DNA of 64,000 nt from Zootoca vivipara (taxonomy: Eukaryota). The translations under genes were made by a program, and so were the position numbers. Below, piece after piece: positions 1 to 58,300 of the stretch. The stretch is taken from NCBI RefSeq assembly GCF_963506605.1, contig NC_083281.1:47120001-47184000 (forward strand). Direction: 5' to 3'. Within the stretch, counting starts at the first letter, position 1. Every line of letters begins with the position of its first letter. The notes under the pieces were generated by a model that worked only from the letters and a program-made list of their open reading frames with translations, ran no database searches and had not been told where the DNA came from.

Positions 1-1412
1 AAGTCAGCAAATGGCAGGCGAGACAGTAAGATTTTGATTCTGGAGCAATGTCAAGGGGGTCACCATTAGTCTGCATGCAAAGGACTCTGCCAACTTAGGG
101 CTTAAGGTGCCTGAATGCCAAAGGCTTCACCAAACAGAGTCAGGATGGTCTGCAGCACAGGCAGAATCCTGGGCCCCTAAGCCTATAGCTTTGCAGGCAG
201 ATAACCAGTGCCTGGTGTGCAGCTCCTGGGGCCAGTACAGTCAGACACCTTCATAGGGCTGTGCTGCCTTCTTAGGAGCAAAGTCCTTCCAAGATAGTAG
301 TTTTATTTGAAGAGAGATCTCTGGCTTTGGGGAAATTTGAAACCCAACACCTGCTGGCTGTTGCTGAATCCTGCTCCTTGCCCACAGCTCCCTTTTTCCA
401 CTTGTCATTTCCCACATCAGAGAGCGCCTTTAAAAGGGAAGACCCTTGTGCTCATGCATTGCTGCTGAGCAATAAAAAACCCCTTTATTCTCTCTCCTGC
501 ACATGAAAGAGCCCCTACCCAGCAGGCACTGTCTGCCTCTTAAGACATGGGCAATCTGACAAAAGGAGAGCAGGGGCATCCCAGCTTGGCTGGCCATCTG
601 TGGCTGGCTGCTGTCCAGTGGGTGAAGGGGGTGGGGAGGGGCCAGGAAGTGAGAAGCTGCTGAGATGGAGCTGCCCTGTGAGAGTCGCAGCACCAGATAG
701 GACAATTAGTGCCTTGTGTGCATCCACAGGCATATCTGCTCCACTTGTTCTGGCTAACGGGGCTCTTGCCTTGTAGACAGATTTAATGTTGGGACAGTGA
801 GATTCTTCCACTTGCCCAGATTGACCCATGCAGTCTGCAAGTATACCCCAACAACCAGCAGGCCCCAAGAAGAGAACCGAGCAAGAACTGTGGCAGAAAG
901 GAGCAGGTGCTTTGTGTCTGCAGGCTGGGAGAAAATTGCTCCCTCTCCAAATATGGTGACGAGGCAGCAGCTCCAGCAAGGAGTTATCTTGAGTGGATTA
1001 TCCAGAACATTGGCAGGAGATAGAACCACCAAGTTCTCAATGCTGCAATGCAGAGGAAAACTGCCATTCTGTTCCAGGGATTGGCGACAACTGAAGGTGG
1101 GTCTGGCATTGCAACAGGAGGGACGGCACCTAAAATTATCAGCATGTGGAAGCTTTTAGTTATTAAAACCTCCACTGCCCTGAAAGGACTTACCCTCCTG
1201 AGTCTTTTAGAGACCAATCTAGGACTTGACACAGAATAAAAGCAAAGACAGTCACTTCTCAAATCTCTCCACCTAGGGAAATCCACGGCTGCTTCACCTG
1301 GGGGCAAGACCCTCACAATGCCCCCCCCACTTCTACACCATTAAAACTCACAGCTAACCAAGGTTTGTGTACTTACCAGTCTCCCCACCCTAGTGCTGTG
1401 AGTCACTTGGAG

Positions 1413-1502
1413 CATAGCTGCCAAGTTTTCCCTTTTCTCGCGAGGAAGCCTATTCAGCATAAGGGAATTTCCCTTAAAAAAAGGGAGAACTTGGCAGCTA
1501 TG
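1413..1502. mobile_element. 90-bp hAT-type MITE
   Basis: TIR CATAGCTGCCAAGTT / AACTTGGCAGCTATG; 8-bp TSD acttggag. Confidence 0.8.
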
Positions 1503-2113
1503 ACTTGGAGACATAAAAGGGCTATTTTTTTTACTAACTGCAGGAGCTGTGAGCTTTTCCTTTTTTTACTGGATTGAGTGTGTTTTTGCTAGGGTTCCTT
1601 AAAGAGGAAATCCATGTGAGCTACAAGAGCTCCATAGGTCACCACTAGTCAAGCAGTCAATGCAGAAACCTCTTCGTCCATGTACCTTCAACACCCCAAG
1701 GTCTGACAGAAGGCAAGCCTTACAACGCAAGGCCCTAGAACTGCCCGTGATTCTGACCTTTCAGGGCTGCCCCTCCATTAACCAGTGTACCTTACAGAGT
1801 TTAGAAACACAACAGCAACACCTGCTGGAAGTAAAAGGAACACCACCACATGCATGCTGGAGGCCTGTCAGCAGGCACTGCTGCAGTCATGGTGCTCTCC
1901 TTAGGATGAAACTAAGGGAGGGGGCTTCTGTTGCTGTTCTTCGAGCTAATCTATTCTGGTCCAGCCACAACATCAGCCAGGTACACAATTTAGTGTTACA
2001 GCATTTACAGTAACGGCTGCACAACTTCCTCACGTGTGTGTGTGAGAGTGGAAACATTCTGGCCATCTCTAAAGCAATTTGTGATGTTTTGGTTGATCCT
2101 AACAAATGTATTA

Positions 2114-2474
2114 GGGACCCAGGTGGCGCTGTGGGTTAAACCACAGAGTCTAGGGCTTGCTGATCAGAAGGTCGGCAGTTCGAATCCCTGCAACGGGGTG
2201 AGCTCCTGTTGCTCGGTCCCAGCTCCTGCCCACCTAGCAGTTCGAAAGCACATCAAAGTGCAAGTAGATAAATAGGGACCGCTCCGGCGGGAAGGTAAAC
2301 GGCGTTTCCGTGCGCTGCTCTGGTTCGCCAGAAGCAGCTTTGTCATGCTGGCCACATGACCCGGAAGCTGTCTGTGGACAAACGCCGGCTCCCTCGGCCT
2401 CTAGAGCGAGATGAGCGCCGCAACCCCAGAGTCGGACACGACTGGACCTGATGGTCAGGGGCCCCTTTACCTTT
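2114..2474 (+). mobile_element. Sauria SINE, full length
   Basis: tRNA-like head (GGTGGCGCTGTGG A-box, GTTCGAATCCC B-box), ACCTTT tail, ~15-bp TSD taacaaatgtattag. Confidence 0.9.
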
Positions 2475-4007
2475 AACAAATGTATTAGCCTCCTGCCCAC
2501 TCTTGGCTTTTGGTCTGAAAGACCAGCCAGCAAGACTACCTGTGCTGAGTACAGACTGTCAATAATCCTTCAGCTCAGAATTCTGGTTATTTTAGGTCAC
2601 CCATTTTAAGCTAAGTGGAGGAAGTGGGTTGGACTGGATGGCCCTTGTGGTCTCTTCCAACTCTATGGTTCTAAGTGGAAGATAAAGGGCATCACATGAC
2701 AAGCTGAGTGGCAACTCTACCCACACTTGCATTTTGACAGATGGGGAGTCATGGGAGCACCTCCACTGCTTGAAACTCAGAAAGGGCAAAGGGTATGTTG
2801 CACCGTGAATCTCTCCCCACCCCCCTTAGAGAAGGGGTAGATATCCTGCCGTCCTCCAGATGTTCCACAGCTGCAACACCCATCCTCCCTTATTGGCCAT
2901 GCCTACTGAGGCTGATGGGAGTTCAACAAATTATGGAGTCCCCTCCCCACAGAGATGAGCCTGCCACCTTCACTATAGTCTCAGGGAATTATGAAGAAAC
3001 ACCTCTTTTGATACCAGAGATGTGTGTTTGGAGGACCCACCCTATTATTGTGACTGTAATTTGCATTAATTGCTTTAATACTGAATTGTCAATTGCTGTA
3101 ACCAACCCTTGGACCTGGTGAAGCAAGGGGAGTAAGTTTAGTAACAATATTTGTAAGGCTGAGGCTGCTGGAAAGCGCCCCCCCCCCCCAGGAGGCCACT
3201 TTGCCCTGATTTCCCAGCCCCTTCCTTGGACTGATGCCACCAGCAAGGGAAGGCAGCCAACCTAGTCCCTTGTCAAATCTCCCTAGCTTTCCGCTTTCGC
3301 CTTTCCTAGAGAAGCTTCAGATGCAGCCATTCCCCTGCCCACTTTACAGAAGTCATTAAAAGCACCAAGGCAGAATTTTGTTTTTCAAGGGGGCAAAACA
3401 TGCTCCCGGTTCCCTTCATCAGCTGTGTGCACTGCACTGTGAATTTTCACACCACATGACCAGGAAAGAGAAAGGGGATTCTACTGAGGTTTATGCCCAA
3501 GAAATCAGATCTGACAGTTCAGAACTTTGGCTACCATCCCTCCTTATCTCCTTGGCACTCAAGCAGGAGACACACACTGACACTTGACAATGAAGGGGAC
3601 AAGGCAGGCCAGGTACAATACCACAGGGAATCAATTCACCTTCAGGGGAGCCTGTGATGCATAAGGCCTCCCTCAGCATGCAGTAACCAAGAACAGCCTT
3701 ACAAAGAAAATCAAATATTTAATAGCAGCTTCCAGAAGGGGAGGAGCCCACACATATTTGGAGCATACATGAAAAAAAGATATGAACAGCAAAGAAGAAA
3801 AACCACTGGCATCCGAGGGGGGTGGGGGGCACAAGGATCTCAGAACTGCTCCAACAGAGTTGTCTGCATGCAGTCAGGATCAAGCCCCATAACTCAAGTT
3901 TGCTCTGGAGTTGATTTTAAAGTGCAAGCTTGATCGTGCATCATCTCGCTCACACAAAACAATGACATGGTTAGTTGTCCTGTGTCCCAGCATTTTAGAT
4001 ACCAACT

Positions 4008-7100: not shown

Positions 7101-8467
7101 ATCATTACCAAGGATGGGAGCAAGGAGCTGTTTCCATAGTCACTATACACTTGCGTGGTTTTGATGGCTTCTCAGCTGAGAAAGCTCCTAATCTCTGTGA
7201 GGAAACTGGAGCTGGGAATCAATCCCATGATGCTTTTCAATGTCTAATTCTCAATGGGACATTAGGAAAGCATAGACGTGGTTCCTCTTTACCTGACATT
7301 GGTCCCTTCAATCTCCAACACCAATGACTGAATATCATTATCTGTAATTCTTTTGATGTGGCCATTCCGCACCTAGAAGGTGAGAATGAAATAGGACATT
7401 ACTCAATTAAGCAGATAACTTTCTTGCTTCAAATAGCATCTGAAATCCCTACCAGGAAGACACACTTCTGAATTAGAAGTGCAGGCTTCATCCTGTTCTC
7501 ACAATGGCCAAACATATTCCCATGGAAAGCCCACAAGCAGGACATAAAAACAACAGAACTCTGTCTACTTGCAGTTCCTAGCAACTGGTACTATAGTGGA
7601 GGCAGTATACAACCACTGCAGCTAGTAGTCATTGCTATACTAATTCGCCATGAATTCAGCTTAATCCTTTTTTAAAGCTGCCCAAGTCAGGGACCATCAT
7701 TACATTATGTGGTACAACTCCCACCATCCATTACCACTGGCCACATTGAATAGGCCTGATGGAAACTGGCATCCAAAACATATGGAGGGCACCTAGTTGG
7801 GGAAGTTATGACCTAGAGAGTAATCTGCTTAGCCACTGAGGGAAATAGGCTGCAAAGCTATTTGGTCTGATCCAACAGGGCTCTTTTCAGCTGTAGTAGG
7901 AAGGGAAAATGAGGCTTTCTGCTTCCAGTCAATTGGAAATGGGACCACCAGGCATGAAGCACTGCTAGACCACCCTAAGATGTCAGGGGCCCAAGGGACA
8001 GTGGAGGGGCTTCCAAAGAAATGGGGCTACAAACGAGGAGGGAACCCAAGAGGATCTCTCCCCAAACAGGTGCCCTCCAGATTGTTCTCCCATCAGCCCC
8101 AACCAAACACAGTAATACGACGCTGGGGCCGACGGGAGTTGTAGTCCAAAAGAGCCCGGATGTTCCCCAGAACTGGCTCGGGCTTCCTTCGAGCATGCGA
8201 AGCCTGAGCGAGGAAGCGAGGCTGGCTGGCTCCGGGGTTCTCCCTGGCGGCGCCACAAGCCCTGAAGAGAGCCCTTGTAGGCCAACCCTTGAAGGCCAAC
8301 CCTCTAGCAGCCATGAGGACTAGAAACCCTCTCGTAGAAACGCCCCCCAGGCCAGGTAGGCCAGGACTAGCTCCCTCCGCCACCTTCTTGTCCCAGATCT
8401 GCAGCGGTTTGCTCCCGATGCTGTAGAGCACGGACAGGAAGCCGCTCTGGAACGTGTTCTTGAACAT
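4123..8467 (-). CDS. CFAP20: Cilia- and flagella-associated protein 20 (spliced CDS, 6 exons, 193 aa)
   Basis: join complement(8384-8467,7293-7372,6309-6420,5755-5943,5151-5261,4123-4128) = 582 nt, all GT-AG. Translates [28 protein letters not shown]...[11 protein letters not shown], nearly identical to vertebrate CFAP20. Confidence 0.98.
5151..5261 (-). CDS. CFAP20: CFAP20 coding exon 5
   Basis: [37 protein letters not shown]; 111 nt. Confidence 0.96.
5755..5943 (-). CDS. CFAP20: CFAP20 coding exon 4
   Basis: [63 protein letters not shown]; 189 nt. Confidence 0.97.
6309..6420 (-). CDS. CFAP20: CFAP20 coding exon 3
   Basis: [37 protein letters not shown]; 112 nt. Confidence 0.96.
7293..7372 (-). 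CDS. CFAP20: CFAP20 coding exon 2
   Basis: [26 protein letters not shown](S); ctag acceptor, gtaaag donor; 80 nt. Confidence 0.96.
8384..8467 (-). CDS. CFAP20: CFAP20 coding exon 1
   Basis: [28 protein letters not shown], then GT donor. Confidence 0.97.
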
Positions 8468-8812
8468 CCCGCCGCCGCCGCCGCGTCGCGGGTAGGGAGG
8501 GCTCGCTCCGCCGGGCGGGTGAGAGGGCGTTGGGCTGCCTCCTCAGCCGCCGCCGCCGCCGCGCGCGTCTCTCGCTCTTCTCAGTGAGTCCTATGCGGAA
8601 GGACACATGCTCCCTCTCACTGTGCACTTCGTCCCCGCGCGACTGGAAGAGCGCTCCGCCAGCCAGCTAAAGCGAGGCTCAAAGGGCCAACCGGACATCA
8701 CGCCGAAGCCACGCCCCCCGTCGTTAAGGGACGGACTACTTTCCGGACGGGACTAGTTGCCGGCCTCTTTCTCGCTCTCTAGGCGCCGTGTGTTGTCGCG
8801 CAGCTCGTGCGC

Positions 8813-9644: not shown

Positions 9645-11209
9645 ACCTACAGGATCACAGCTTCTAAGTACCAGTTTCTGGAGAAAACACTTTGAGAGAG
9701 CTTCTATTACAGTATTATGATTATCACTAATTTGTTACCTGCCTTTCACCAACAGGTCCCAGGGCGGGGTAAAGCAATTTGAAATTCAGGATTTGAAACA
9801 GATTACAGTCACCAGAATAGGGTGGGTTCTGAAAATGCACATCAACATTGTGTCATAGGCCAGGTTAAAGATGTGTGTTTTCAGCATTCCCTAAAAGCTG
9901 TATAGTGAAGGTGTCAGATGCAAATCTGTGTGGATGGAATTCCACAACTTAAGGAACACCACAGAGAATTGTCTTCTCTTGGGCTGCTGCCACCTCTGAA
10001 CTTCCTCAGGAGTGGAACTATGAAGAGGGGCCCCTCTGCCCACCTTAGCACCCACAATGGTCTCTAGAGAACAAGCTGGCCTTTTCACTATTTGGGCCTG
10101 AGTCATTTAGGGCTTTAAATGCTAACATGAGAACTTTGAATTAAGACAGGAAACAAATTGGCAGCTAATGTAGCTGTCTTAGAATAAGGGTTGAGTTCTA
10201 AAAGCAACCCCAACCAATAATATGATCGCAGTTTGGACCAGTTGAGGTTTCTGAGTAGTCTTCAAGGGCAGCCCCACATAGAGTGCATTGCAATAATTTA
10301 GTATGGAATTTAGAGCATGGAGTGTTTTTTAATACATAAAAAAGAAAGCTGGGAGGGTGGAGACACCTCAAAACCACCCAATGAGGATTGAATGAAAAGA
10401 GTTATTGTAGAATGTGGAGGAGGAACATAAATTGGGGTGGGGAATGGTAGAATGGACTATCAGGAATCCCAAACTGTAATAGTTCATGCTGCCCCATATT
10501 TTGTTGTACATCCACTTGTTTCCTGATTGCAGAGAAAACAGCCATGACCAATGCAAAAGAGGGCAGCATCAGCAAGCAAGTGGCAAGGTTCTCAGATGTG
10601 TGTGCTTAAACCTTGATTAGGACTGCTAGGCAAAGATATCCAAACTGTGCAGTCTTTTGCTTCTGGAGACTTTCCCCAGTTTTCTTTTGCCTGGCAAGCT
10701 GTGCCCAGCTGCTGTTTCAAGTCCACTCTGCTCTCTGGATGCTGGCAATAGCAAGATTTCTTCAACCATAGATTCCTTATGCTTGCCCCTTCCTCACCCC
10801 ACCAGTTTCCCTGCCTCTCAGACATGTTTGTTGTTTCCTTTCCTTTCAATTAGTCAGCACTCAATTAGTCAACACTTGCTGCAGTTATCCCAAAAGGAAA
10901 GCTGTCTGTTTTTAGAAATGTTAGAACCCAGGGTGGCAATTGGATTTTGGCTGAGGGCACCTTATCAGCTTCCATGTTCTCACCTGCACCAGTCAAAAGA
11001 AGCTTGTAGGCTCACTCTATCTTTAAGGAACTTCCCACACAAATCAGTGTAAACTGCTGTCATCTTCAGATGAAGGGCAGTATAAAAAATTAATTAAAAA
11101 AAAACACCTTATTATTATTGTTGTTGTTTTATGTTTCTGTACTGACATTTCAAGCCATAAAGCTATTTTACTTACCATCCACCATTATGTGTAAACAAAC
11201 ATTTTAGTT

Positions 11210-11344
11210 CAGTGTATCTGAAGAAGTGTGCATGCACACGAAAGCTTATACTAAGATCAAACTAAGTTTGTCTCTAAGGTGCTACTGGACAATTTTTACA
11301 TATATATATTTCGACTGTGTCAGACCAACATGGTTACCTACCTG
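11210..11344 (+). mobile_element. Short Penelope-like (hammerhead-bearing) retroelement
   Basis: Homologous to 40210-40379 and 43424-43556; flanked by 9-bp direct repeat attttagtt. Confidence 0.7.
11214..11251 (+). ncRNA. Minimal hammerhead ribozyme motif (Penelope-like element type), copy 1
   Basis: GTAT-CTGAAGA-A-GTGTG CATG CACAC-GAA-AGCT-T-ATAC. Confidence 0.7.
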
Positions 11345-12491
11345 ATTTTAGTTATAGTGACATTTGTAGCTTTTGCTACAAATTTAAAATTTGTAGTGAC
11401 ATACAGCAAAAACCACAGGGTCACCACAATAAGAATCACAAAAGTTGTATCTCAGTGAACACAAGTACAAGATTTAATTTGTGTGGATAGACACACAAGC
11501 AGATCCGTTAACAGGAGTGTCTGGACAACAGAGAGGGTGAAATGCTAAAGGAGGCAGTAATGCACTCTTTATTGGGGGGGAAACAGTATCCAGTTGGATC
11601 CCCGCCCCCTGATTTAAATAATTGCCTTCAAGTTAAAAACAAGGCATTGCAGCATGTGTTCCAGACCTCAGAAGCAACTTAGTATTCCAGTAGCAGGTTG
11701 AGTTATAGTACTGAGCAAGAAGAGCTCCTTCACAATAAGGCTATTCCAACCATTCACAAGAGGGGAAGCAGCCCTCCTAAACTGTTCTCTCTCTCCTATG
11801 GTCCAGGCACTGCTTTACCCTCTAGACTGCCTGCTTGGCATTCTTTGTTGCTAGAGATAGCCAATGGCTTCCCGAATGCTTAGACATGAATTTGTGAGAG
11901 GCAGATTACATACTTGGGGAGTATGGCTGATCTTCTGGTGTGTGTGTTTGTGTGCTTGTGGGGAAACATAGAAATGGAAATAGTGAAAGTGTCCAGCATG
12001 TGGCACTGGCAGAGGGAGCGTTCTGCTCTTCCCTTTTTGTGCTCAAGGACTGCTTCCCTGCTTTCCAGGTGCCCTATATTCTTCCAACCAACCCACCCAT
12101 GGAAGGAAAGCAGCCTCTTGCACAGCAGCAGCAGCAGCACCGCTGCATGCAATTTACAGCTCTTTGGGGGTCCTCTCCACTTTAATCTGCACAAACTCCT
12201 CAAACAGGTCAGCCATGGATTGCCAGGCATCATGCCTAGCTCAGCCATACGATGTCAAGGGAATCAAAGGAAAGAAGATACATTTTTTAAAAAAAATGAA
12301 GAAAAAAAATGTGTGATTGATGCCAAGACACTCATGAGCAAATTGTGAAGCCGTTTCTGATTTTCAGGGATAGTGACTATGAGCAGCAAGACATCCCTCC
12401 CTCTTTCTTCTTTCACTTATTTTTTGACCTCCTGCTTTGGAGATCAACCATGAGAGTATCTGAATCATTTTACATATTGATTGGTTTATTG

Positions 12492-39990: not shown

Positions 39991-40209
39991 GGCTTTTTGT
40001 TTTTAAAGAAGTTGTGGCAGGAAAGGAGCGCGAGTACTCTTTTGAAAACAGAGGCTTTTCCCCCTTTAATACTGTGAAGATTTTTCTTTCATCCCCCTCA
40101 TTTTGAAATACCGGTAGCCAAGTAACTTAATACAAAATGCTCTAAGACGAAGTTGTTACTAACCCTTTTTGGGAGAGCTGATTGGGATTAGCGAGGTGAT
40201 CTCCTGAAA

Positions 40210-40379
40210 CAGGTAGGTAGCCGTGTTGGTCTGGTGTAGTCGAAACAAAATAAAAGATTCCTTCCAGTAGCACCTTAGAGACTAACTAAGTTTGTCATTG
40301 GTATGAGCTTTCGGTGCATGCACACTTCTTCAGATACCTTCTTCAGATACTGGAAGGAATCTTTTATTTTGTTTCGACT
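40210..40379 (-). mobile_element. Short Penelope-like retroelement with inverted segment
   Basis: 10-bp direct repeat tctcctgaaa; 32-bp perfect inverted repeat 40238-40269 / 40348-40379. Confidence 0.72.
40301..40337 (-). ncRNA. Minimal hammerhead ribozyme motif, copy 2
   Basis: reverse complement GTAT-CTGAAGA-AGTGTGCATGCACC-GAA-AGCT-C-ATAC (1-nt deletion in stem II). Confidence 0.62.
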
Positions 40380-40454
40380 TCTCCTGAAAGTTAGCGAGAA
40401 CTTTGAAAATGGCGCTGTTCACCCATTCCTCCTGGCAAACGCATTGGATGGTAG

Positions 40455-42947: not shown

Positions 42948-45900
42948 GTGCGGCGAGAAGAACCCGCGCGGCGGCTCCGGCTCTTCCTCCAACGTACACC
43001 CGCTTGGGGCCCCTCAAAAACACCCCCTTTCCTTCCCCGCCACTGGCTGGCAGCCATCCCTGTGGGCAAAGGGAACGACCTACCCTGGGGCGGCGCGGGT
43101 CTCCCCCAATCGCCTTCTAAATCCGGCCCGCGGACGGTCCAGGCATCAGCGTGTTTTTACATGAGTAGAATGTGTCCTTTTATGTAAAATGCATCTCTGG
43201 GTTATTTGTAGAGCCTGCCTGGTGTTTTTACATGAGTAGAATGTGTGCTTTTATTTAAAATGCATCTCTGGGTTATTTGTGGGGCGTAGGAATTCGTTCT
43301 TTTTTTCTTCTTCAAAATATAGTCCTGTCCCCCCCAAAGGTCTGAGGGACAATGGACCGACCCCCTGCTATAAGAGTTTGCTGGCCTGTTTTAAAGAGTA
43401 AGCTTTAAAACTTTTCTCAGGTACAGGTAGGTAGCCGTGTTGGTCTGAGTCGAAGCAAAATAAAAAAATTCCTTCAGTAGCACCTTAAAGACCAACTAAG
43501 TTTTTATTTTGGTATGAGCTTTCGTGTGCATGCACACTTCTTCAGATACTTTCTACTTTCTCAGGTAGTTATTGTTCCATAATTTATTGCTGCTTTACCT
43601 CAAATGGAACCCTCAGAGTGGTGCAAAAGTTATACAGTATACCCCCCCTCTCTAAGGAGCAGGTTACCATAGATTGCAGCTTGAGGATTTTGCCTTAATG
43701 GATGCTGTTGTTATCCCTTTTGGTTTGCGACATGCATTGCTCACATGAACCACTGGGTTTGCTCACCTAATCTTTCATCTACCTTCAGCCATGACAATGC
43801 CATGCTCAAACTCGAGACAACAATGTTTGAGAAGACTTTCAATCGGCTTGAGCCAAGGGACTTGTTGCTGGAAAAGTTTGGCTCCTTTATGGACATGGGA
43901 CAAGCACAACTTGTAAGTTATGGGATTATTTTACAGATACTGGTATAGCTGTTGTGACAGTATTTGTGGTTTTGATGGTGCAAAGAGTCGGCTCCCATGT
44001 CCTTTCCTGAAGCTTAACTGGCCCAGAGTGTGGATGAGAAGCAGACCCTGAATTTAAAATGCTGTTTTTGTCCTATAAAGCCTTAGGTGGCTCAGGTCCC
44101 CACTACCTTAGGAACTGCTTCTACCTGCATGGACCTACTCAGACCCTGCACTTGTCATCTGAAGCCCTTGATGTCATCTGAAGCCCTGCTCCAATGGAAG
44201 GGCAGAGGGTGCCAGCACAAGATTGGGCCTTCTCAGAGGTGGCTCGCAAGTGTGGAATGCTCTCCCCAGAGAAATGTACCAAGTTCCATCACTACCTATA
44301 TTTAGACCACATTCCTTTTCATCCAGGCATTTTGTTCTTAATTGATGTTCATCATTTAGTAGGTTAGGTTATGATTTGTCCTTTTTATTATAGGATGAGT
44401 ACTTTTAGTCAACTAATGTTCTTTTATCTTTTTTATTTATTTTGAATTTTGTATCATGCATGCTTTTATAATTGTAAGTTGCTTTGAGACTTTTTTGTAA
44501 TAAGCAACAAATAAATATAATACTAACAATATTTTATTGTTATTATTAATATCAGGCTGCCAATCTGTCTTGTATCCAATTCACCACAAATTTCATCTAA
44601 GACACCTAACAAAGCATATCACTTATTAATATTCATAAAGGGGGAAAAGAAGAAACAAATGGTAAATTCTAGAGTTCAGTTGCACCTTTTGTGGCTTTTT
44701 ATGTAGAGCTGTGTGCTGCTATCTTGCAATCATTTTGTTTCTAGGCACGAGGCAGGCGCAAATCTAAAGCCCGGTTAACAGCAGATCGCCTGGTGGGTCT
44801 GACGGTGGAACAGAAATGTGACATAGCACAACGGGAGCTGGAGGAGACAAAGGAAGACGTTCAGAGGTTAAAGGAGAACTCAGAAAGGCTCTTGCAGAAC
44901 TACCTGGTATAGTTGTCCATCTGCTCTGGGATAGGAAGAGGCACATTGTGTGGTATCGCTGTACTGAAGTGTGTGATTTCTCCTCATTGAGGCACCTGTT
45001 CATGCCAGGTCAAATTTAGTAACAGTGAGCAGTGGTATACCATTTTTGGCCCACTCAGCAGTATCTGGTGATTCAGGTGAAGAGGCACTTTTCTACCAAT
45101 CAAATTTATAATCCAAAGGTAGTTCATTTAGTCAAGGCTGTAGACAAGTGGTCTTATTGAGAAGCAGAAGGCAGGAAATGATGGCACTTGATAACATTAA
45201 AACACTGAGCTTCAAGATCCCCTGAATTTTCTTGGATTTAGCGCTGATCTTGTCATACGTTTCTGTGCAGTAGTACTTTGGGAAAGGCTTAAAAACACCA
45301 ATTTATGGACACTCCAAGGAGCTGCGGGCTTATAAAAGCCATAGTTAAGGGGAGGATGTGCCTTTTAAAAAACTGTCAGTTTTGCTGTTGATTGGGAAGA
45401 TACATGCCAGGCTGCCTCTTGCAGAATCTCAGAATATTTCTCTTTTGTGTATGTTAAAATAGATGCTGAAGAGCTAAAACTTGGGTTAAATGTCTCTTTT
45501 CTGGATATTTAAACTTGGGGTGCATAGCTGGCCAGAGTGGGTGGCTGCTTAATTTTTCTGCCAATAAAATCCTTCTTTTCCTCATTCATTATTTCAGTAC
45601 TATAAACAAAGCAGGAGCTGTGGCATGAGAAATACAGCTGAAGTACTTGACAGTGTCATTTGCTCACACAGGCTCTTATGCATGGAGTTTGGGGAGCCCA
45701 ATTAGGGTTAGTTCCAAGATTATCAGTTGCAATAACATGGTCAGGTTTGGAAAGCTTTTCCAATGGAGTGTGACTTTCAAGGTGGGAACTGAGCAAGGGA
45801 GATAGACAAAAACATTATATGGGCCTGCACCATCTGCCCTGTGGGAAGGAAAGGGGGGAAGCAAGAGAGACAGGAAACATCAGTGCCTGCTGCCATTGGA

Positions 45901-55328: not shown

Positions 55329-58300
55329 GCACACACACACACACACATAACAATATCTAAAAATTATAATTTAATAATAGAAAACACAAGTGCTAATGTT
55401 AAAGCACCACCCTGCCTAGTAAATGGCTGCAGCAATGCTCTCTTAAAAGAGGGAAATATTTTCTGTACTTTCACTATGCCTTGCTGAAGTGTTTGCATAG
55501 TCGCTAGAAGAGAACTTGTTGTATTCATGAATTGTGTAGAGGTAGCAGCAGATGAGCCTATGAACATGACTTTCTCACCAGGCATCCAGACACATTGTCA
55601 GCTTTCCTGTGGCTGCAGCACTCTGTCGTCATGATTCTGTGCAGGGGACAGGGGTCAACATCCACCACCGAGAGCTTCCGTAGAGAGACGCTCCCTGTCT
55701 GGACTGAGATACAAAGGCATGAGCAAAGCCTGGCCTTTCTAGGTCTTTACAGGACTAAGTTTGCAACGGAACACAACACACATTGGGCTGCCCATCTTCC
55801 CTTCAAAGCCCACCCTCCTGTGCTAAATGCTGTATTTCCTATCTTCTGTCCAGGACAAAGAGGAAGTAGCTCTCCTTAGTACACAACAGTGAGGGGCAAG
55901 GTAAAGAAAAGAAAAAAGATCTCACTAGCTTCCAGAATTTGGTTCTGGCAAAATATCTACAAATTGAAATTAGATTAGTGACTCTATTGGTTCAAAAGAA
56001 TTCTCAATGTTCTAAAAAAGGTTTGAATAGCACCTTGTCTCTAGTGCCCAGCCAGGAGAAATCTTGGAATCCACATGCAATAACCACATGCAAGGAAGAC
56101 ATAGATCTGATCCCTGGGAACTGTGGGAAGTCTTCCACATGCAGATGGCCAATAGATGTGTATCCATGAGATGGATGGATGTTCTCATGGGAGGAAAACT
56201 GAAAATAGGTATAACACCAAATATGCCACCCAGAGCTCCTTGTAGGAAGAGTAGGATGTAAAAGCAATCCAAAAATAATGGAGCAAATGATCTTGCACAG
56301 GGTTTGTGAAGACTGCCTTTGTGAGCGCCATGGTACAGAAGTAGCTCACCTGTGTGAGGATGCAGCCAGCCTGCAATCAAGCAGTTCCTCAGAGCTGTCA
56401 CAGGGAAGTTTTCAGGTGGGAAGCAGATGGGCTGCAGGGCCTTGCTGAAATAGAGCCGGGCGCCTATCTTCAGGAGGGCAATGTCATGGTGAAGAGTGAG
56501 TTCATCAAAGGCTTCATGTGGGATGATGGCACTGATGGGGATCAAGAAACTTCTGTGTTTCGGGCCTGTGATACCAACCAGGGCCAACACCTGGGTCCTG
56601 GCCATGGAAAGCATAAGCAAAGAGAAGGCACTTGAGTGAACACAGATATGGGCCCTTACTTCAGGCCTCTCCATTCCTGGGGAATGCTTCTGGGCTTGAG
56701 GCACAGAAATTGAAGAGGAGGTGCAGCGATACAGTGGTACCTCGGGTTATAGACGCTTCAGGTTACAGACGCTTCAGGTTACAGACTCCACTAACCCAGA
56801 AATAGTACCTCGGCTTAATAACTTTGCCCCAGGACGAGAACAGAAATTGTGCTCCGGCGGCGTGGCCCCATTAGCTAAAGTGGTACCTCAGGTTAAGATC
56901 AGTTTCAGCTTAAGAATAGACCTCCAGAACGAATTAAGTTCTTAACCCGAGGTACCACTGTATATGAAAAGAATCAGTTAATGAATGCCTGACTTTCAAG
57001 TACCAGTTAAAAGCACAGAAATCCTGACATCATGCTAAACATGTCTTTACATACTACTACTACTACTACTACTACTACTAATAATAATAATAATAAATAG
57101 CAGGCAGGAGAGGGGTTAGGTTTTCATCAGGATGCAGGAAATGGGGAAGTGAGGTTTAACCGTTTCCTTGTTGGCCACAATTCTGGCCTGCCCTCCTGAC
57201 TCTGGCTATTGGCTTAAAAAAAATCCTATTGGTTCTCGGATGCACACAACCAATCAGGGTTTTGTCAAGCCTAGCAGGCAAAAGGGACCCTAATTCCTGC
57301 CTGCTAGGCTTGCCAACGTTTTGACTGGCCCCTGCTGGATCAGGCCAATTGCCCATCTACTCCAGTAGCCTGTTCTCAAAGTGGCCAACCAGACTTCATT
57401 GTGTTTCTTTGCTGGGGGCTATGTACTTCTGGCAGCCTATTGTGGTAGGATTCTGATTAACTGAGCAGCCAGTTTTCCAGTGTGGCTGGGAATAAAGGTC
57501 TTCATCTCAGGCTTTCATGGACTCGCCTGGGAGCGGTTTTCCTGAAACACCACCTTTTTTGCAGCTGCTGCAAGGGACAGGAGCAGGCCACTGAGCAGAG
57601 GACTCTGCCCGGGCTCCACTGCAACCCTGCTACATCTCCAACTTGACCTACTTGTCTAGCTAGAATGACCCAAGGATAGGATTGTGCTGCAAGAACTATT
57701 GTTGCAAAGTCTTTCCTGGCCCTTGAGGGAAGTTGCCTATACAGTGTTTGAAGATTTGCAGCTATAACTGTTCCTGTTCTATCTGTGTAAAAACCTCCAC
57801 TTTAGCACCCACCTGTTCAGGAAAGTAGAGGCTGCACTTACTATCCAGTGTTTATCCAGGATGCAGCCCAAAGCCAAGTGGTTGCCATAGACATCCTGCA
57901 AAGATACCATCCAAGGGAGTTCATCCACAACTGCAAACTCTTGCATGAGTCTTCTGGGATCTAAGCTGATCTGCATGCCGCAATCTGTGCCAGTTAGAAA
58001 GAGGAGGGGCAAGTCAGACTCGGCCAGTATTTTCTCCTTTGTCCTGCTAATATCCAGGAGGTTCATTACTCCATTGTGCTGCAGGAAGCAGAACATGTCC
58101 TCCAGTGGATGGGGAGCCCCTGCATTCCCTTCTGGACAACTTTCCAAAGGCCACATGCCAGCAGTGGGTAAAGCCAAAGGGAAAAGTGGGTAGAGAAATG
58201 GAAGTACATTTGACCTCTCTATCCTCCATCCAGGCAAACAAGAGTCAGGCCCTCTGTTATAGCTGGAGCTGGTAGAAGCCAGAGTCCAGCATTTGGAAGG

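What the first reader, a model, noticed from the sequence alone, without database searches (positions are those of the whole stretch)
43424..43556. Family of tiny TSD-flanked retroelements, each carrying a minimal hammerhead ribozyme (3 copies in 64 kb)
Seen: three homologous ~130-170 bp elements at 11210-11344 (+), 40210-40379 (-) and 43424-43556 (-). Each has its own 9-11 bp flanking direct repeat, so they inserted independently. Each contains GUAU-CUGAAGA-A-GUGUG(CAUG)CACAC-GAA-AG/CU-H-AUAC. This gives the hammerhead core CUGANGA...GAAA, stem II GUGUG/CACAC, stem I GUAU/AUAC, a CUC or CUU cleavage triplet, and a loop-less palindromic stem III (AGCU). Established: Penelope-like retroelements carry minimal hammerheads with very short palindromic stem III that are thought to cleave as dimers. 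Inference: this is an abundant non-autonomous, retrozyme/SINE-like ribozyme element in this lizard, mobilised by Penelope machinery. It may instead be extremely truncated Penelope ends. Copy 3 is the most intact.
Basis: partly seen in the sequence, partly recalled or inferred. Interest (0 to 1): 0.78.

Follow-up and report, generated by a model that had tools for sequence, protein, structure and literature searches.

The report
Short Penelope retroelement insertions with hammerhead
These are three real, independently inserted 130-base end pieces of a very abundant lizard Penelope-like retrotransposon, each carrying that family's known minimal hammerhead ribozyme motif, so they are a clean example of a known kind and not a new type of element.

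Summary
The window has three homologous 126-170 bp insertions, each with its own 9-11 bp target-site duplication. A minimal type-I hammerhead motif is intact in 2 of 3 copies; copy 2 has a 1-nt deletion in stem II (0 hits in 200 shuffles).

The motif has the published features of Penelope-like-element (PLE) minimal hammerheads (PMC4209133). The distance from stem II to the 3' end is 113 nt. This matches the internal reverse-transcription start, 111-118 nt, measured for the Anolis Poseidon element (PMC11167929). Copy 2 has the known PLE footprint of an inverted 5' arm.

Read pile-ups show a very abundant, sharply bounded family. No RNA ends pile up at the predicted cut site.

I read these as dead-on-arrival PLE by-products running from the RT start site to a fixed 5' end. 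That end is probably the 5' end of the pLTR-initiated RNA; this step is inferred.

I found no tandem units, no tRNA-like head and no RT or GIY-YIG frame in the window, so the retrozyme/SINE reading is not supported.

I could not link the family directly to a PLE ORF. The scan has noted this family before on other DNA of this genome (186 notes).

The parts
11210..11344 (+). Copy 1: a 135-bp insertion. It has 4 nt (CAGT) of upstream parent sequence followed by the 131-nt family unit. It is the most diverged copy, 80-82% identical to the others.
11214..11251 (+). Copy 1 minimal hammerhead, intact by the descriptor, with H17 = U. The predicted cut lies between 11247 and 11248.
11201..11209 (.). 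Copy 1 target-site duplication ATTTTAGTT. The second copy is at 11345-11353.
40210..40337 (-). Copy 2 main arm, 128 nt. Hammerhead stem II carries a 1-nt deletion, so the motif fails the descriptor.
40338..40350 (-). Copy 2: a second, perfect copy of the first 13 nt of the unit (GTATCTGAAGAAG). Both copies start at the same G.
40351..40379 (+). Copy 2 inverted 5' arm. It is identical to the reverse complement of 40240-40268 in the main arm. It ends at ...TTTCGACT, 28 nt short of the usual 3' end.
40380..40389 (.). Copy 2 target-site duplication TTTCAGGAGA. The second copy is at 40200-40209.
43424..43549 (-). Copy 3: the 126-nt family unit. It carries the majority letter at every variant site of the element that one search lists for the DNA run.
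43512..43549 (-). Copy 3 minimal hammerhead, intact by the descriptor, with H17 = C. The predicted cut lies between 43516 and 43515.
43550..43556 (-). Copy 3: a 7-nt filler (GTAGAAA) between the upstream TSD and the unit.
43557..43567 (.). Copy 3 target-site duplication TACCTGAGAAA. The second copy is at 43413-43423.
43424..43447 (-). AC-rich 3' terminal block (CAGACCAACACGGCTACCTACCTG) shared by all three copies, with 0-2 mismatches. It is the presumed site where reverse transcription starts.
   Evidence: PMC11167929

Best explanation
Each element is a short, dead-on-arrival insertion made by the reverse transcriptase/endonuclease of a Penelope-like retrotransposon (PLE).

Proposed steps:
1. 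cDNA synthesis started at the element's internal, AC-rich RT start site. This is the constant 3' end ...CCTACCTG.
2. Synthesis ran about 113 nt back through the minimal hammerhead.
3. Synthesis ended at a fixed point, the first base of hammerhead stem I.

[quoted passage not shown] On this view the 130-bp unit is a run-off copy of the RNA leader.

The hammerhead is the known PLE minimal type. It has a 4-bp stem I, a bulged A before stem II and a loop-less AGCU stem III that can only pair between two RNAs. It is kept by selection in the master elements, not in these copies.

The hammerhead cut site defines neither end of the insertions, so the template RNAs were uncut.

Shown: the anatomy, the TSDs, the motif, the abundance and the sharp family boundaries.
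Inferred: PLE parentage, the RT-start identity of the 3' end, the transcription-start identity of the 5' end, and the inability of the copies to move again.
For: [quoted passage not shown]
- Geometry: the start of stem II to the 3' end is 113 nt in copy 3. In Anolis Poseidon the ORF begins at stem II and RT starts 111-118 nt into it, in an AC-rich stem-loop.
- Copy 2: the inverted arm is identical to its main arm and 28 nt shorter at the RT-start side. This fits the two RT start sites, the 30-40 bp 'tail' present at one end only, and priming on both DNA strands.
- 5' ends: the termini lie at -4, 0, 0 and 0 relative to the G of GTATC, counting copy 2's duplicated 13-mer.
- Upstream sequence: reads of other copies that run past 43549 share their first 12 letters in three runs. 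In the two RNA runs the consensus ends, 25-30 nt out, in a TATA-like ATATAA/ATATAT on the element strand, with a TTCAGT initiator-like motif at the boundary (table 7). Copy 1 keeps the CAGT.
- Family boundaries: RNA depth rises from 13-19 to 838-2107 at 43420, and falls to 0-8 after 43555. The summed DNA word depth is 1.0-3.9 million on the element against 14.6 on the unique flank.
- Conservation: the hammerhead and the 3' block are conserved, and the A/T-rich linkers are not.
Against: - No RT or GIY-YIG frame is in the window: 0 of the 150 longest of 215 open frames of 75 aa or more. I therefore never saw this family attached to a PLE ORF. Parentage rests on motif, geometry, footprint and unchecked notes of this scan.
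- The region between hammerhead and 3' end is closed in all three frames in copies 2 and 3. Only copy 1 keeps the loop-II ATG frame open, for 37 codons. That peptide found no PLE protein among 1.84 billion representatives. This differs from Anolis Poseidon, where the segment is coding.
- For the transcription-start sub-claim, table 6 lists no place where RNA molecules begin or end, and 82-84% of laid RNA reads run on into unlike sequence. The RNA seen is mostly host read-through, not unit transcripts.
- Agreement of the upstream loose-end consensus is only 0.39-0.50. The place of those loose ends is set by copy 3's own boundary, so cannot say what share of copies end there.
- Only three loci were examined directly.
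Confidence: 0.75

Rival explanations
1. A self-propagating non-autonomous element (SINE-like, or a retrozyme monomer). The 130-nt unit is itself transcribed, perhaps cut and circularised by its hammerhead, and copied again by PLE enzymes.
For: The length is discrete and the ends are constant in 3 of 3 copies. Abundance is very high. The abundant form has no open frame (and reading). A 2026 preprint argues that animal non-LTR retrozymes derive from PLE pLTRs (10.64898/2026.07.22.740005; part 1 of 5 and passages read).
Against: There are no tandem units in the window. ARAGORN finds no tRNA-like head and Rfam gives no hit. The copies end at the RT start and lack the downstream RNA that the Anolis enzyme needed, up to +172. 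No RNA ends pile up at the cut site or anywhere else (table 6). RNA reads are mostly chimeric with unrelated flanks. No joint from the unit's 3' end back to its 5' end is among the 15 joint rows shown; 52 rows were not shown.
Confidence: 0.12
2. Ordinary random 5' truncation of PLE insertions. On this reading the three similar lengths are a coincidence and there is no discrete class.
For: PLE insertions are known for heavy 5' truncation (PMC8557442, passages). Most min-HHRs were reported as single motifs 'probably related to truncated PLEs' (PMC4209133). Some reads do continue upstream into shared sequence (table 7).
Against: Four 5' termini from three events fall within 5 nt of each other. 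The summed DNA word depth does not fall toward the 5' end of the unit: 1.0 million at the 3' bin against 3.9 million at the hammerhead bin. That measure is no copy number.
Confidence: 0.08
3. The class is a PLE by-product as above, but the fixed 5' end is not a transcription start. It could be where RT stops or switches template at the folded hammerhead. It could also be an RNA-processing site: the upstream TTCTGTTTCAG looks like a 3' splice acceptor, and in Drosophila virilis Penelope the intron ends at the 5' edge of helix I.
For: The upstream consensus reads as a pyrimidine tract followed by CAG, 1 nt before stem I (table 7). PMC4209133 states that the D. virilis intron end maps to the 5' end of helix I. 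No RNA 5' ends pile up at the boundary (table 6).
Against: A spliced RNA would carry a shared upstream exon, yet the three copies have unrelated sequence or filler there. Copy 2's end-to-end recopying of the first 13 nt suggests a true template end. A TATA-like motif lies at the right distance for a start site.
Confidence: 0.2

Closest known systems
Minimal hammerheads of Penelope-like elements (Cervera & de la Pena 2014, PMC4209133; whole text parts 1-2 read)
   Same: Both have the CUGANGA...GAAA core, an unpaired nucleotide before stem II, a G10.1-C11.1 pair, a short helix I and no loop 3, with palindromic 15.2-16.2. They occur mostly as single dispersed motifs. The paper reports them in reptiles (turtle and snakes).
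   Different: The paper places the motifs in pLTRs of elements with an RT-EN ORF, and I could not see such an ORF next to this family. Here stem II plus loop II is a perfect 14-nt palindrome. The paper does not describe a fixed-length 130-bp class.
Poseidon PAc of Anolis carolinensis (Frangieh et al. 2024, PMC11167929; parts 1-2 and passages read)
   Same: Both have a hammerhead just upstream of an internal RT start in an AC-rich region 111-118 nt from stem II (113 nt here). In both, insertion ends fall on the RT start sites, a tail lies between two start sites, and both DNA strands are primed. No RNA-seq ends are seen at the cut site.
   Different: In PAc the segment after stem II is the start of the ORF, and the cut site is 26 nt after the start codon. 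[quoted passage not shown] Sequence relatedness to PAc was not tested, because its sequence is in a supplement I could not see.
Metazoan non-LTR retrozymes (Cervera & de la Pena 2020, PMC7229834, passages; Li et al. 2026 preprint, part 1 and passages)
   Same: Both are ORF-less units with a type-I hammerhead and larger TSDs. A link to PLE machinery has been proposed for retrozymes.
   Different: Retrozymes are tandem arrays of 170-400 nt units with canonical hammerheads and abundant circRNAs. These are solitary 130-bp units with a minimal hammerhead, and no circular or tandem junction was seen.
Schistosome SINE-like elements with a hammerhead (as described in the review PMC6765202, passages)
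   Same: Both are short, dispersed, ORF-less repeats carrying a hammerhead.
   Different: The review draws those elements as a promoter followed by the hammerhead. No internal promoter or tRNA-like head was found here.

Membership tests
PLE minimal hammerhead (min-HHR) | Catalytic core CUGANGA ... GAAA with U16.1 and H17, flanked by stem I pairs | tested here: met
   My descriptor script hits copies 1 and 3 and gives 0 hits in 200 shuffles. Copy 2 fails because of a stem II deletion.
PLE minimal hammerhead (min-HHR) | [quoted passage not shown] | tested here: met
   CUGAAGA-A-GUGUG...CACAC in copies 1 and 3. The feature list is from PMC4209133.
PLE minimal hammerhead (min-HHR) | No loop 3, with palindromic 15.2-16.2, so that helix III forms only between two RNAs | tested here: met
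   AGCU lies directly before H17 in all 3 copies.
PLE minimal hammerhead (min-HHR) | Lies in the pseudo-LTR of an element encoding RT + GIY-YIG | not testable with these tools
   There was no RVT or GIY-YIG hit in the 150 of 215 open frames scanned. No tool here reads the rest of this genome. Only unchecked notes say so.
PLE minimal hammerhead (min-HHR) | Self-cleavage, as a dimer or with protein help | not testable with these tools
   This needs a bench assay. Nearest-neighbour energies do not favour the double hammerhead: -11.1 kcal/mol against -12.0 for two monomers and -30.6 for a stem-II palindrome duplex. No RNA ends pile up at the cut site.
PLE insertion footprint | Target-site duplication, no poly(A), and a 3' end at the internal RT start | tested here: met
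   TSDs are 9, 10 and 11 bp. All three copies end in ...CCTACCTG with no A-tail. Copy 3 ends 113 nt from the start of stem II, against the published 111-118 nt.
PLE insertion footprint | Inverted 5'-truncated arm, and a 30-40 bp tail at one end only | tested here: met
   Met in copy 2 only (1 of 3). Its inverted arm at 40351-40379 lacks the last 28 nt. Opposite-strand joints are also seen in reads of other copies (table 5).
Non-LTR retrozyme | Tandem units, each with a hammerhead | tested here: not met
   TRF finds no array with a period near 130, and nhmmer finds 3 solitary copies.
Non-LTR retrozyme | Unit-length circular RNA | tested here: inconclusive
   No 3'-to-5' junction is among the 15 joint rows shown. 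Another 52 rows were not shown, and the libraries are ordinary RNA-seq.
SINE | Pol III head derived from tRNA, 7SL or 5S | tested here: not met
   ARAGORN finds 0 genes in the window. Rfam gives 0 matches at gathering score.
Rfam hammerhead families | Score at or above the family's gathering threshold | tested here: not met
   There are 0 matches in the window at gathering score. No hammerhead model matches at E up to 10 on 43380-43620. This is expected for a motif without helix III.

The most novel reading that the evidence does not exclude
The hammerhead sits at the very 5' end of the RNA started by the pseudo-LTR promoter. The roughly 10^5-scale 130-bp class would then be a genomic record of 'strong-stop' events: the PLE enzyme starts at the first RT start site it meets and runs off the capped 5' end about 130 nt later. 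Most insertions this family has made would be abortive leader copies. The hammerhead would be conserved as a 5'-terminal RNA module bound by the PLE protein, not as a processing site.
Probability: 0.3. Interest if true: 0.45.

Novelty: new member of a known kind. Interest (0 to 1): 0.25.

Why it matters
The finding adds a lizard family to the known association of minimal hammerheads with Penelope-like elements. It also gives three clean natural insertions whose ends agree with the internal RT start site measured in vitro for an Anolis element.

The one point that goes beyond print, as far as my searches reach, is the fixed 5' end at the first base of the hammerhead. If that end is the RNA 5' end, these very numerous copies record how often PLE reverse transcription ends as a dead 130-nt product. 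The hammerhead cut would then play no part in making them. This bears on the open question of what PLE hammerheads are for.

For annotation, these units should be masked as PLE fragments and not called a SINE or a retrozyme.

Tried and rejected
- **Rfam.** There were no matches at gathering score over the whole window. At E up to 10 on 43380-43620 the only hits were three chance matches: L10_leader, TCV_H4 and Afu_198.
- **Parent element elsewhere.** An exact 28-mer and a gapped hammerhead pattern found 0 loci in metagenome contigs. The gapped pattern found 0 in viral contigs. These collections hold little animal DNA, so the blanks say nothing.
- **Coding test.** Copy 1's 37-codon open frame was searched against 1.84 billion representatives. 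It gave one hit, P0001, a 683-aa translation of a tandem repeat with 33% identity over 10 stretches. I reject this hit as repeat-inflated. The frame is probably open by chance.
- **tRNA-like head.** A CTTAG...CTAAG hairpin and a TTCGA motif made me check. ARAGORN found nothing. The sigma-70 and terminator scan found nothing and is irrelevant to a eukaryote.
- **PLE ORF remnants in the window.** Pfam on 150 of 215 open frames of 75 aa or more gave Pkinase 3, CFA20_dom 2, Trypsin 1 and PSF3_N 1. There was no RT or GIY-YIG hit. The 65 shortest frames were not scanned. Searches rescanned 30 frames for context: only Trypsin at 56015-56704(-) and the first CFA20 exon at 8096-8542(-) matched.
- **Dimer folding.** The double-hammerhead conformer is not favoured by nearest-neighbour energies. 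I do not count this against activity, because the core's tertiary contacts are not modelled.
- **Limits of the reads.** cannot give the share of copies that end at stem I, because every foreign read becomes loose where copy 3 itself ends.
- **Papers.** Lunse, Weinberg & Breaker (PMC5785218) is not held. I know it only from a reference list and a review passage. I did not ask for any supplementary file. Frangieh's Figs S1-S2 and File S1, and Cervera's Figs S2-S4, may already show short copies or the reptile motifs.
- **Earlier notes.** Look-ups by place and by longer word sets gave nothing.
Full report
**What is there.** Reading the three places and aligning them shows one family.

- It has a 126-131 nt unit that begins GTATCTGAAGAAG and ends CAGACCAAC(A/G)(C/T)GG(C/T)TACCTACCTG, with no A-tail.
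- A profile of the three copies finds only these three full hits in the 64 kb (E 2.5e-42 to 4.3e-40), plus a 41-nt inverted hit next to copy 2.
- Pairwise identity is 80.5%, 82.5% and 91.1%.
- Each copy has its own exact flanking repeat: 9 bp for copy 1, 10 bp for copy 2 and 11 bp for copy 3. They are independent insertions.

**The hammerhead.**

- I wrote a descriptor with a 4-bp stem I, CUGANGA, an optional bulged base, a stem II closed by G-C, GAAA, a complementary 15.2/16.2 pair, U and H. It hits 11214-11251(+) and 43512-43549(-) and nothing else. It hit nothing in 200 dinucleotide shuffles.
- Copy 2 lacks one base of the 3' strand of stem II and fails the descriptor.
- The bulged A, the G10.1-C11.1 pair, the loop-less palindromic AGCU and the short helix I are the features that Cervera and de la Pena list for minimal hammerheads of Penelope-like elements. 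They report these in reptiles as well (PMC4209133).
- Rfam's models do not see the motif. This is expected without a helix III.
- Among the three copies the hammerhead has 2 variable columns of 38, against 31 of 94 for the rest (p = 0.0007). The last 24 columns have 2 variable.
- Two blocks are therefore held constant across diverged source elements: the ribozyme and the 3' end.

**Ends and footprint.**

- In copy 3 the distance from the first base of stem II to the 3' end is 113 nt.
- For the Anolis Poseidon element, Frangieh et al. report that the ORF starts at stem II. They report that reverse transcription starts internally, 111-118 nt into the ORF, in an AC-rich stem-loop. They also report two start sites that bracket the 30-40 bp 'tail', and that both DNA strands are cut and extended (PMC11167929).
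- Copy 2 fits this. Its inverted arm at 40351-40379 is identical to the reverse complement of 40240-40268. The arm stops 28 nt short of the usual 3' end, so the tail is present at one end only, as drawn for PLEs in PMC8557442.
- The 5' side is fixed as well. The unit starts at the G of GTATC in copy 3, and twice in copy 2, where the first 13 nt are recopied end to end. It starts 4 nt further out in copy 1.
- None of the copies starts or ends at the predicted cut site.

**Reads (two RNA runs as raw reads, one DNA run and one run of a second species as contigs, laid on 43250-43750 at 85% likeness).**

- *Depth:* it is low on the unique flanks and jumps on the element. In X21 it is 13-19 in bin 43403-43419 and 838-2107 in bin 43420-43436. 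It is 390-1086 in bin 43539-43555 and 0-8 beyond.
- *DNA run:* the summed word depth is 1.0-3.9 million on the element against 14.6 on the flank. The tool warns that this is no copy number, but it agrees in scale with 3 copies per 64 kb. It does not fall toward the 5' end.
- *3' boundary:* loose ends are heterogeneous (2425 and 641 reads, agreement about 0.45, and different consensus in the two runs). This boundary is therefore family-wide.
- *5' boundary:* the position of the loose ends is set by copy 3 itself and is not informative. Their consensus shares its first 12 letters in three runs. In the two RNA runs it ends in a TATA-like motif 25-30 nt out on the element strand, with TTCAGT at the boundary. 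Agreement is only 0.39-0.50.
- *RNA ends:* table 6 lists no place where molecules begin or end, so there is no pile-up at the cut site 43516|43515 or at the 5' boundary.
- *Chimeric reads:* 82-84% of what was laid runs on into unlike sequence. That count includes a neighbouring repeat.
- *Other copies:* opposite-strand joints occur inside the unit, for example 43468/43534 with 97 reads in X21 and 20 in X22.

[quoted passage not shown] The 5' end as a pseudo-LTR transcription start is about 50%. The rivals for that step are RT stopping at the fold or an RNA-processing site. The upstream motif also looks like a splice acceptor, and in D. virilis the intron ends at helix I.

Because the copies stop at the RT start, they lack the RNA downstream of it, which the Anolis enzyme needed up to +172. 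I therefore expect them to be unable to move again. This is an inference across families.

**What I could not show.**

- No RT or GIY-YIG frame lies in the window: 0 of the 150 scanned of 215 open frames.
- The window instead holds host gene pieces: Pkinase, CFA20, PSF3_N and Trypsin.
- Scans of other collections found nothing.
- Copy 1's open 37-codon frame found no PLE protein.
- Copies 2 and 3 are closed in all frames, unlike the coding segment of Anolis Poseidon.
- Parentage therefore rests on motif, geometry and footprint. It also rests on unchecked notes of this scan that mention full elements with GIY-YIG, a TATA box and the hammerhead elsewhere in this genome.

**Compared with the known, and novelty.**

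- The motif and its PLE association are in print.
- The RT-start geometry and the absence of RNA ends at the cut site are in print for Anolis.
- Retrozymes differ in being tandem, in having canonical hammerheads and in producing circles.
- My searches found no paper describing a fixed-length 130-bp class in lizards. I saw only listings for most hits and no supplements.
- Verdict: a new member of a known kind, of low to moderate interest.
- The scan has met this family many times on other DNA of this genome (186 notes).

Noticed in passing
window 43497 (- strand A in CTTAGTTGG): T>C on the + strand (A>G on the element strand) appears in 318 of 1083 (X21) and 325 of 665 (X22) first-mate-on-+ RNA reads. 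It appears in only 83 of 3232 and 49 of 1169 reads of the other direction, and at about 0.2% of DNA word depth (table 3). This could be A-to-I editing at a UAG site, or a single highly expressed copy that carries G.
   Followed up: no
window 43557-43750 and 43386-43402: A 305-nt contig of the second species (organism B, depth 4.4) aligns from exactly 43557, the edge of the insertion, up to 43750, with 9 substitutions and some indels. The unique bin on the other side has depth 4.85 (tables 2 and 8). This suggests an empty site, so copy 3 would be younger than the split of the two species. The joining row itself was not shown.
   Followed up: partly
window 43475-43552 in organism B contigs: In the second species the hammerhead half of the unit passes the 85% likeness limit at depth 29,000-71,000. 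The 3' half reaches only 400-3,000 (table 2). The ribozyme end is the part conserved between species.
   Followed up: no
window 43130-43370: Another very high-copy repeat lies next to copy 3, with summed DNA word depth 1.1-2.7 million at 43250-43300. It contains two tandem units of about 70 nt, and reads show 'goes back 36' joints. The family was not identified.
   Followed up: no
window 43524-43537 and 11226-11239: Stem II plus loop II (GTGTGCATGCACAC) is a perfect 14-nt palindrome. RNAcofold therefore predicts a 14-bp intermolecular duplex dimer at -30.6 kcal/mol, which lacks helix III. The double hammerhead scores -11.1 kcal/mol.
   Followed up: partly
window 43461 and 43484: Loose ends with high agreement occur at 43461 (376 reads, 0.90, X21) and at 43484 (184 reads, 0.98, X22). 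They point to single, well-expressed transcripts elsewhere in the genome that contain a partial copy of the unit (table 7).
   Followed up: no
window 8096-8542(-), 56015-56746(-) and other open frames: Host gene pieces are present: the first CFA20-domain exon at about 8.4 kb on the - strand, a trypsin-domain exon at about 56 kb, three Pkinase frames and one PSF3_N frame. From recall, not tested, this gene set resembles the CSNK2A2-CFAP20-PRSS54-GINS3 neighbourhood of mammals. Copy 1 lies about 2.7 kb upstream of the CFA20 first exon.
   Followed up: partly
window 11232-11342(+): Copy 1 keeps an open frame of 37 codons from the ATG in hammerhead loop II to the end of the unit. Copies 2 and 3 do not. 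Its only database hit was a tandem-repeat translation.
   Followed up: yes
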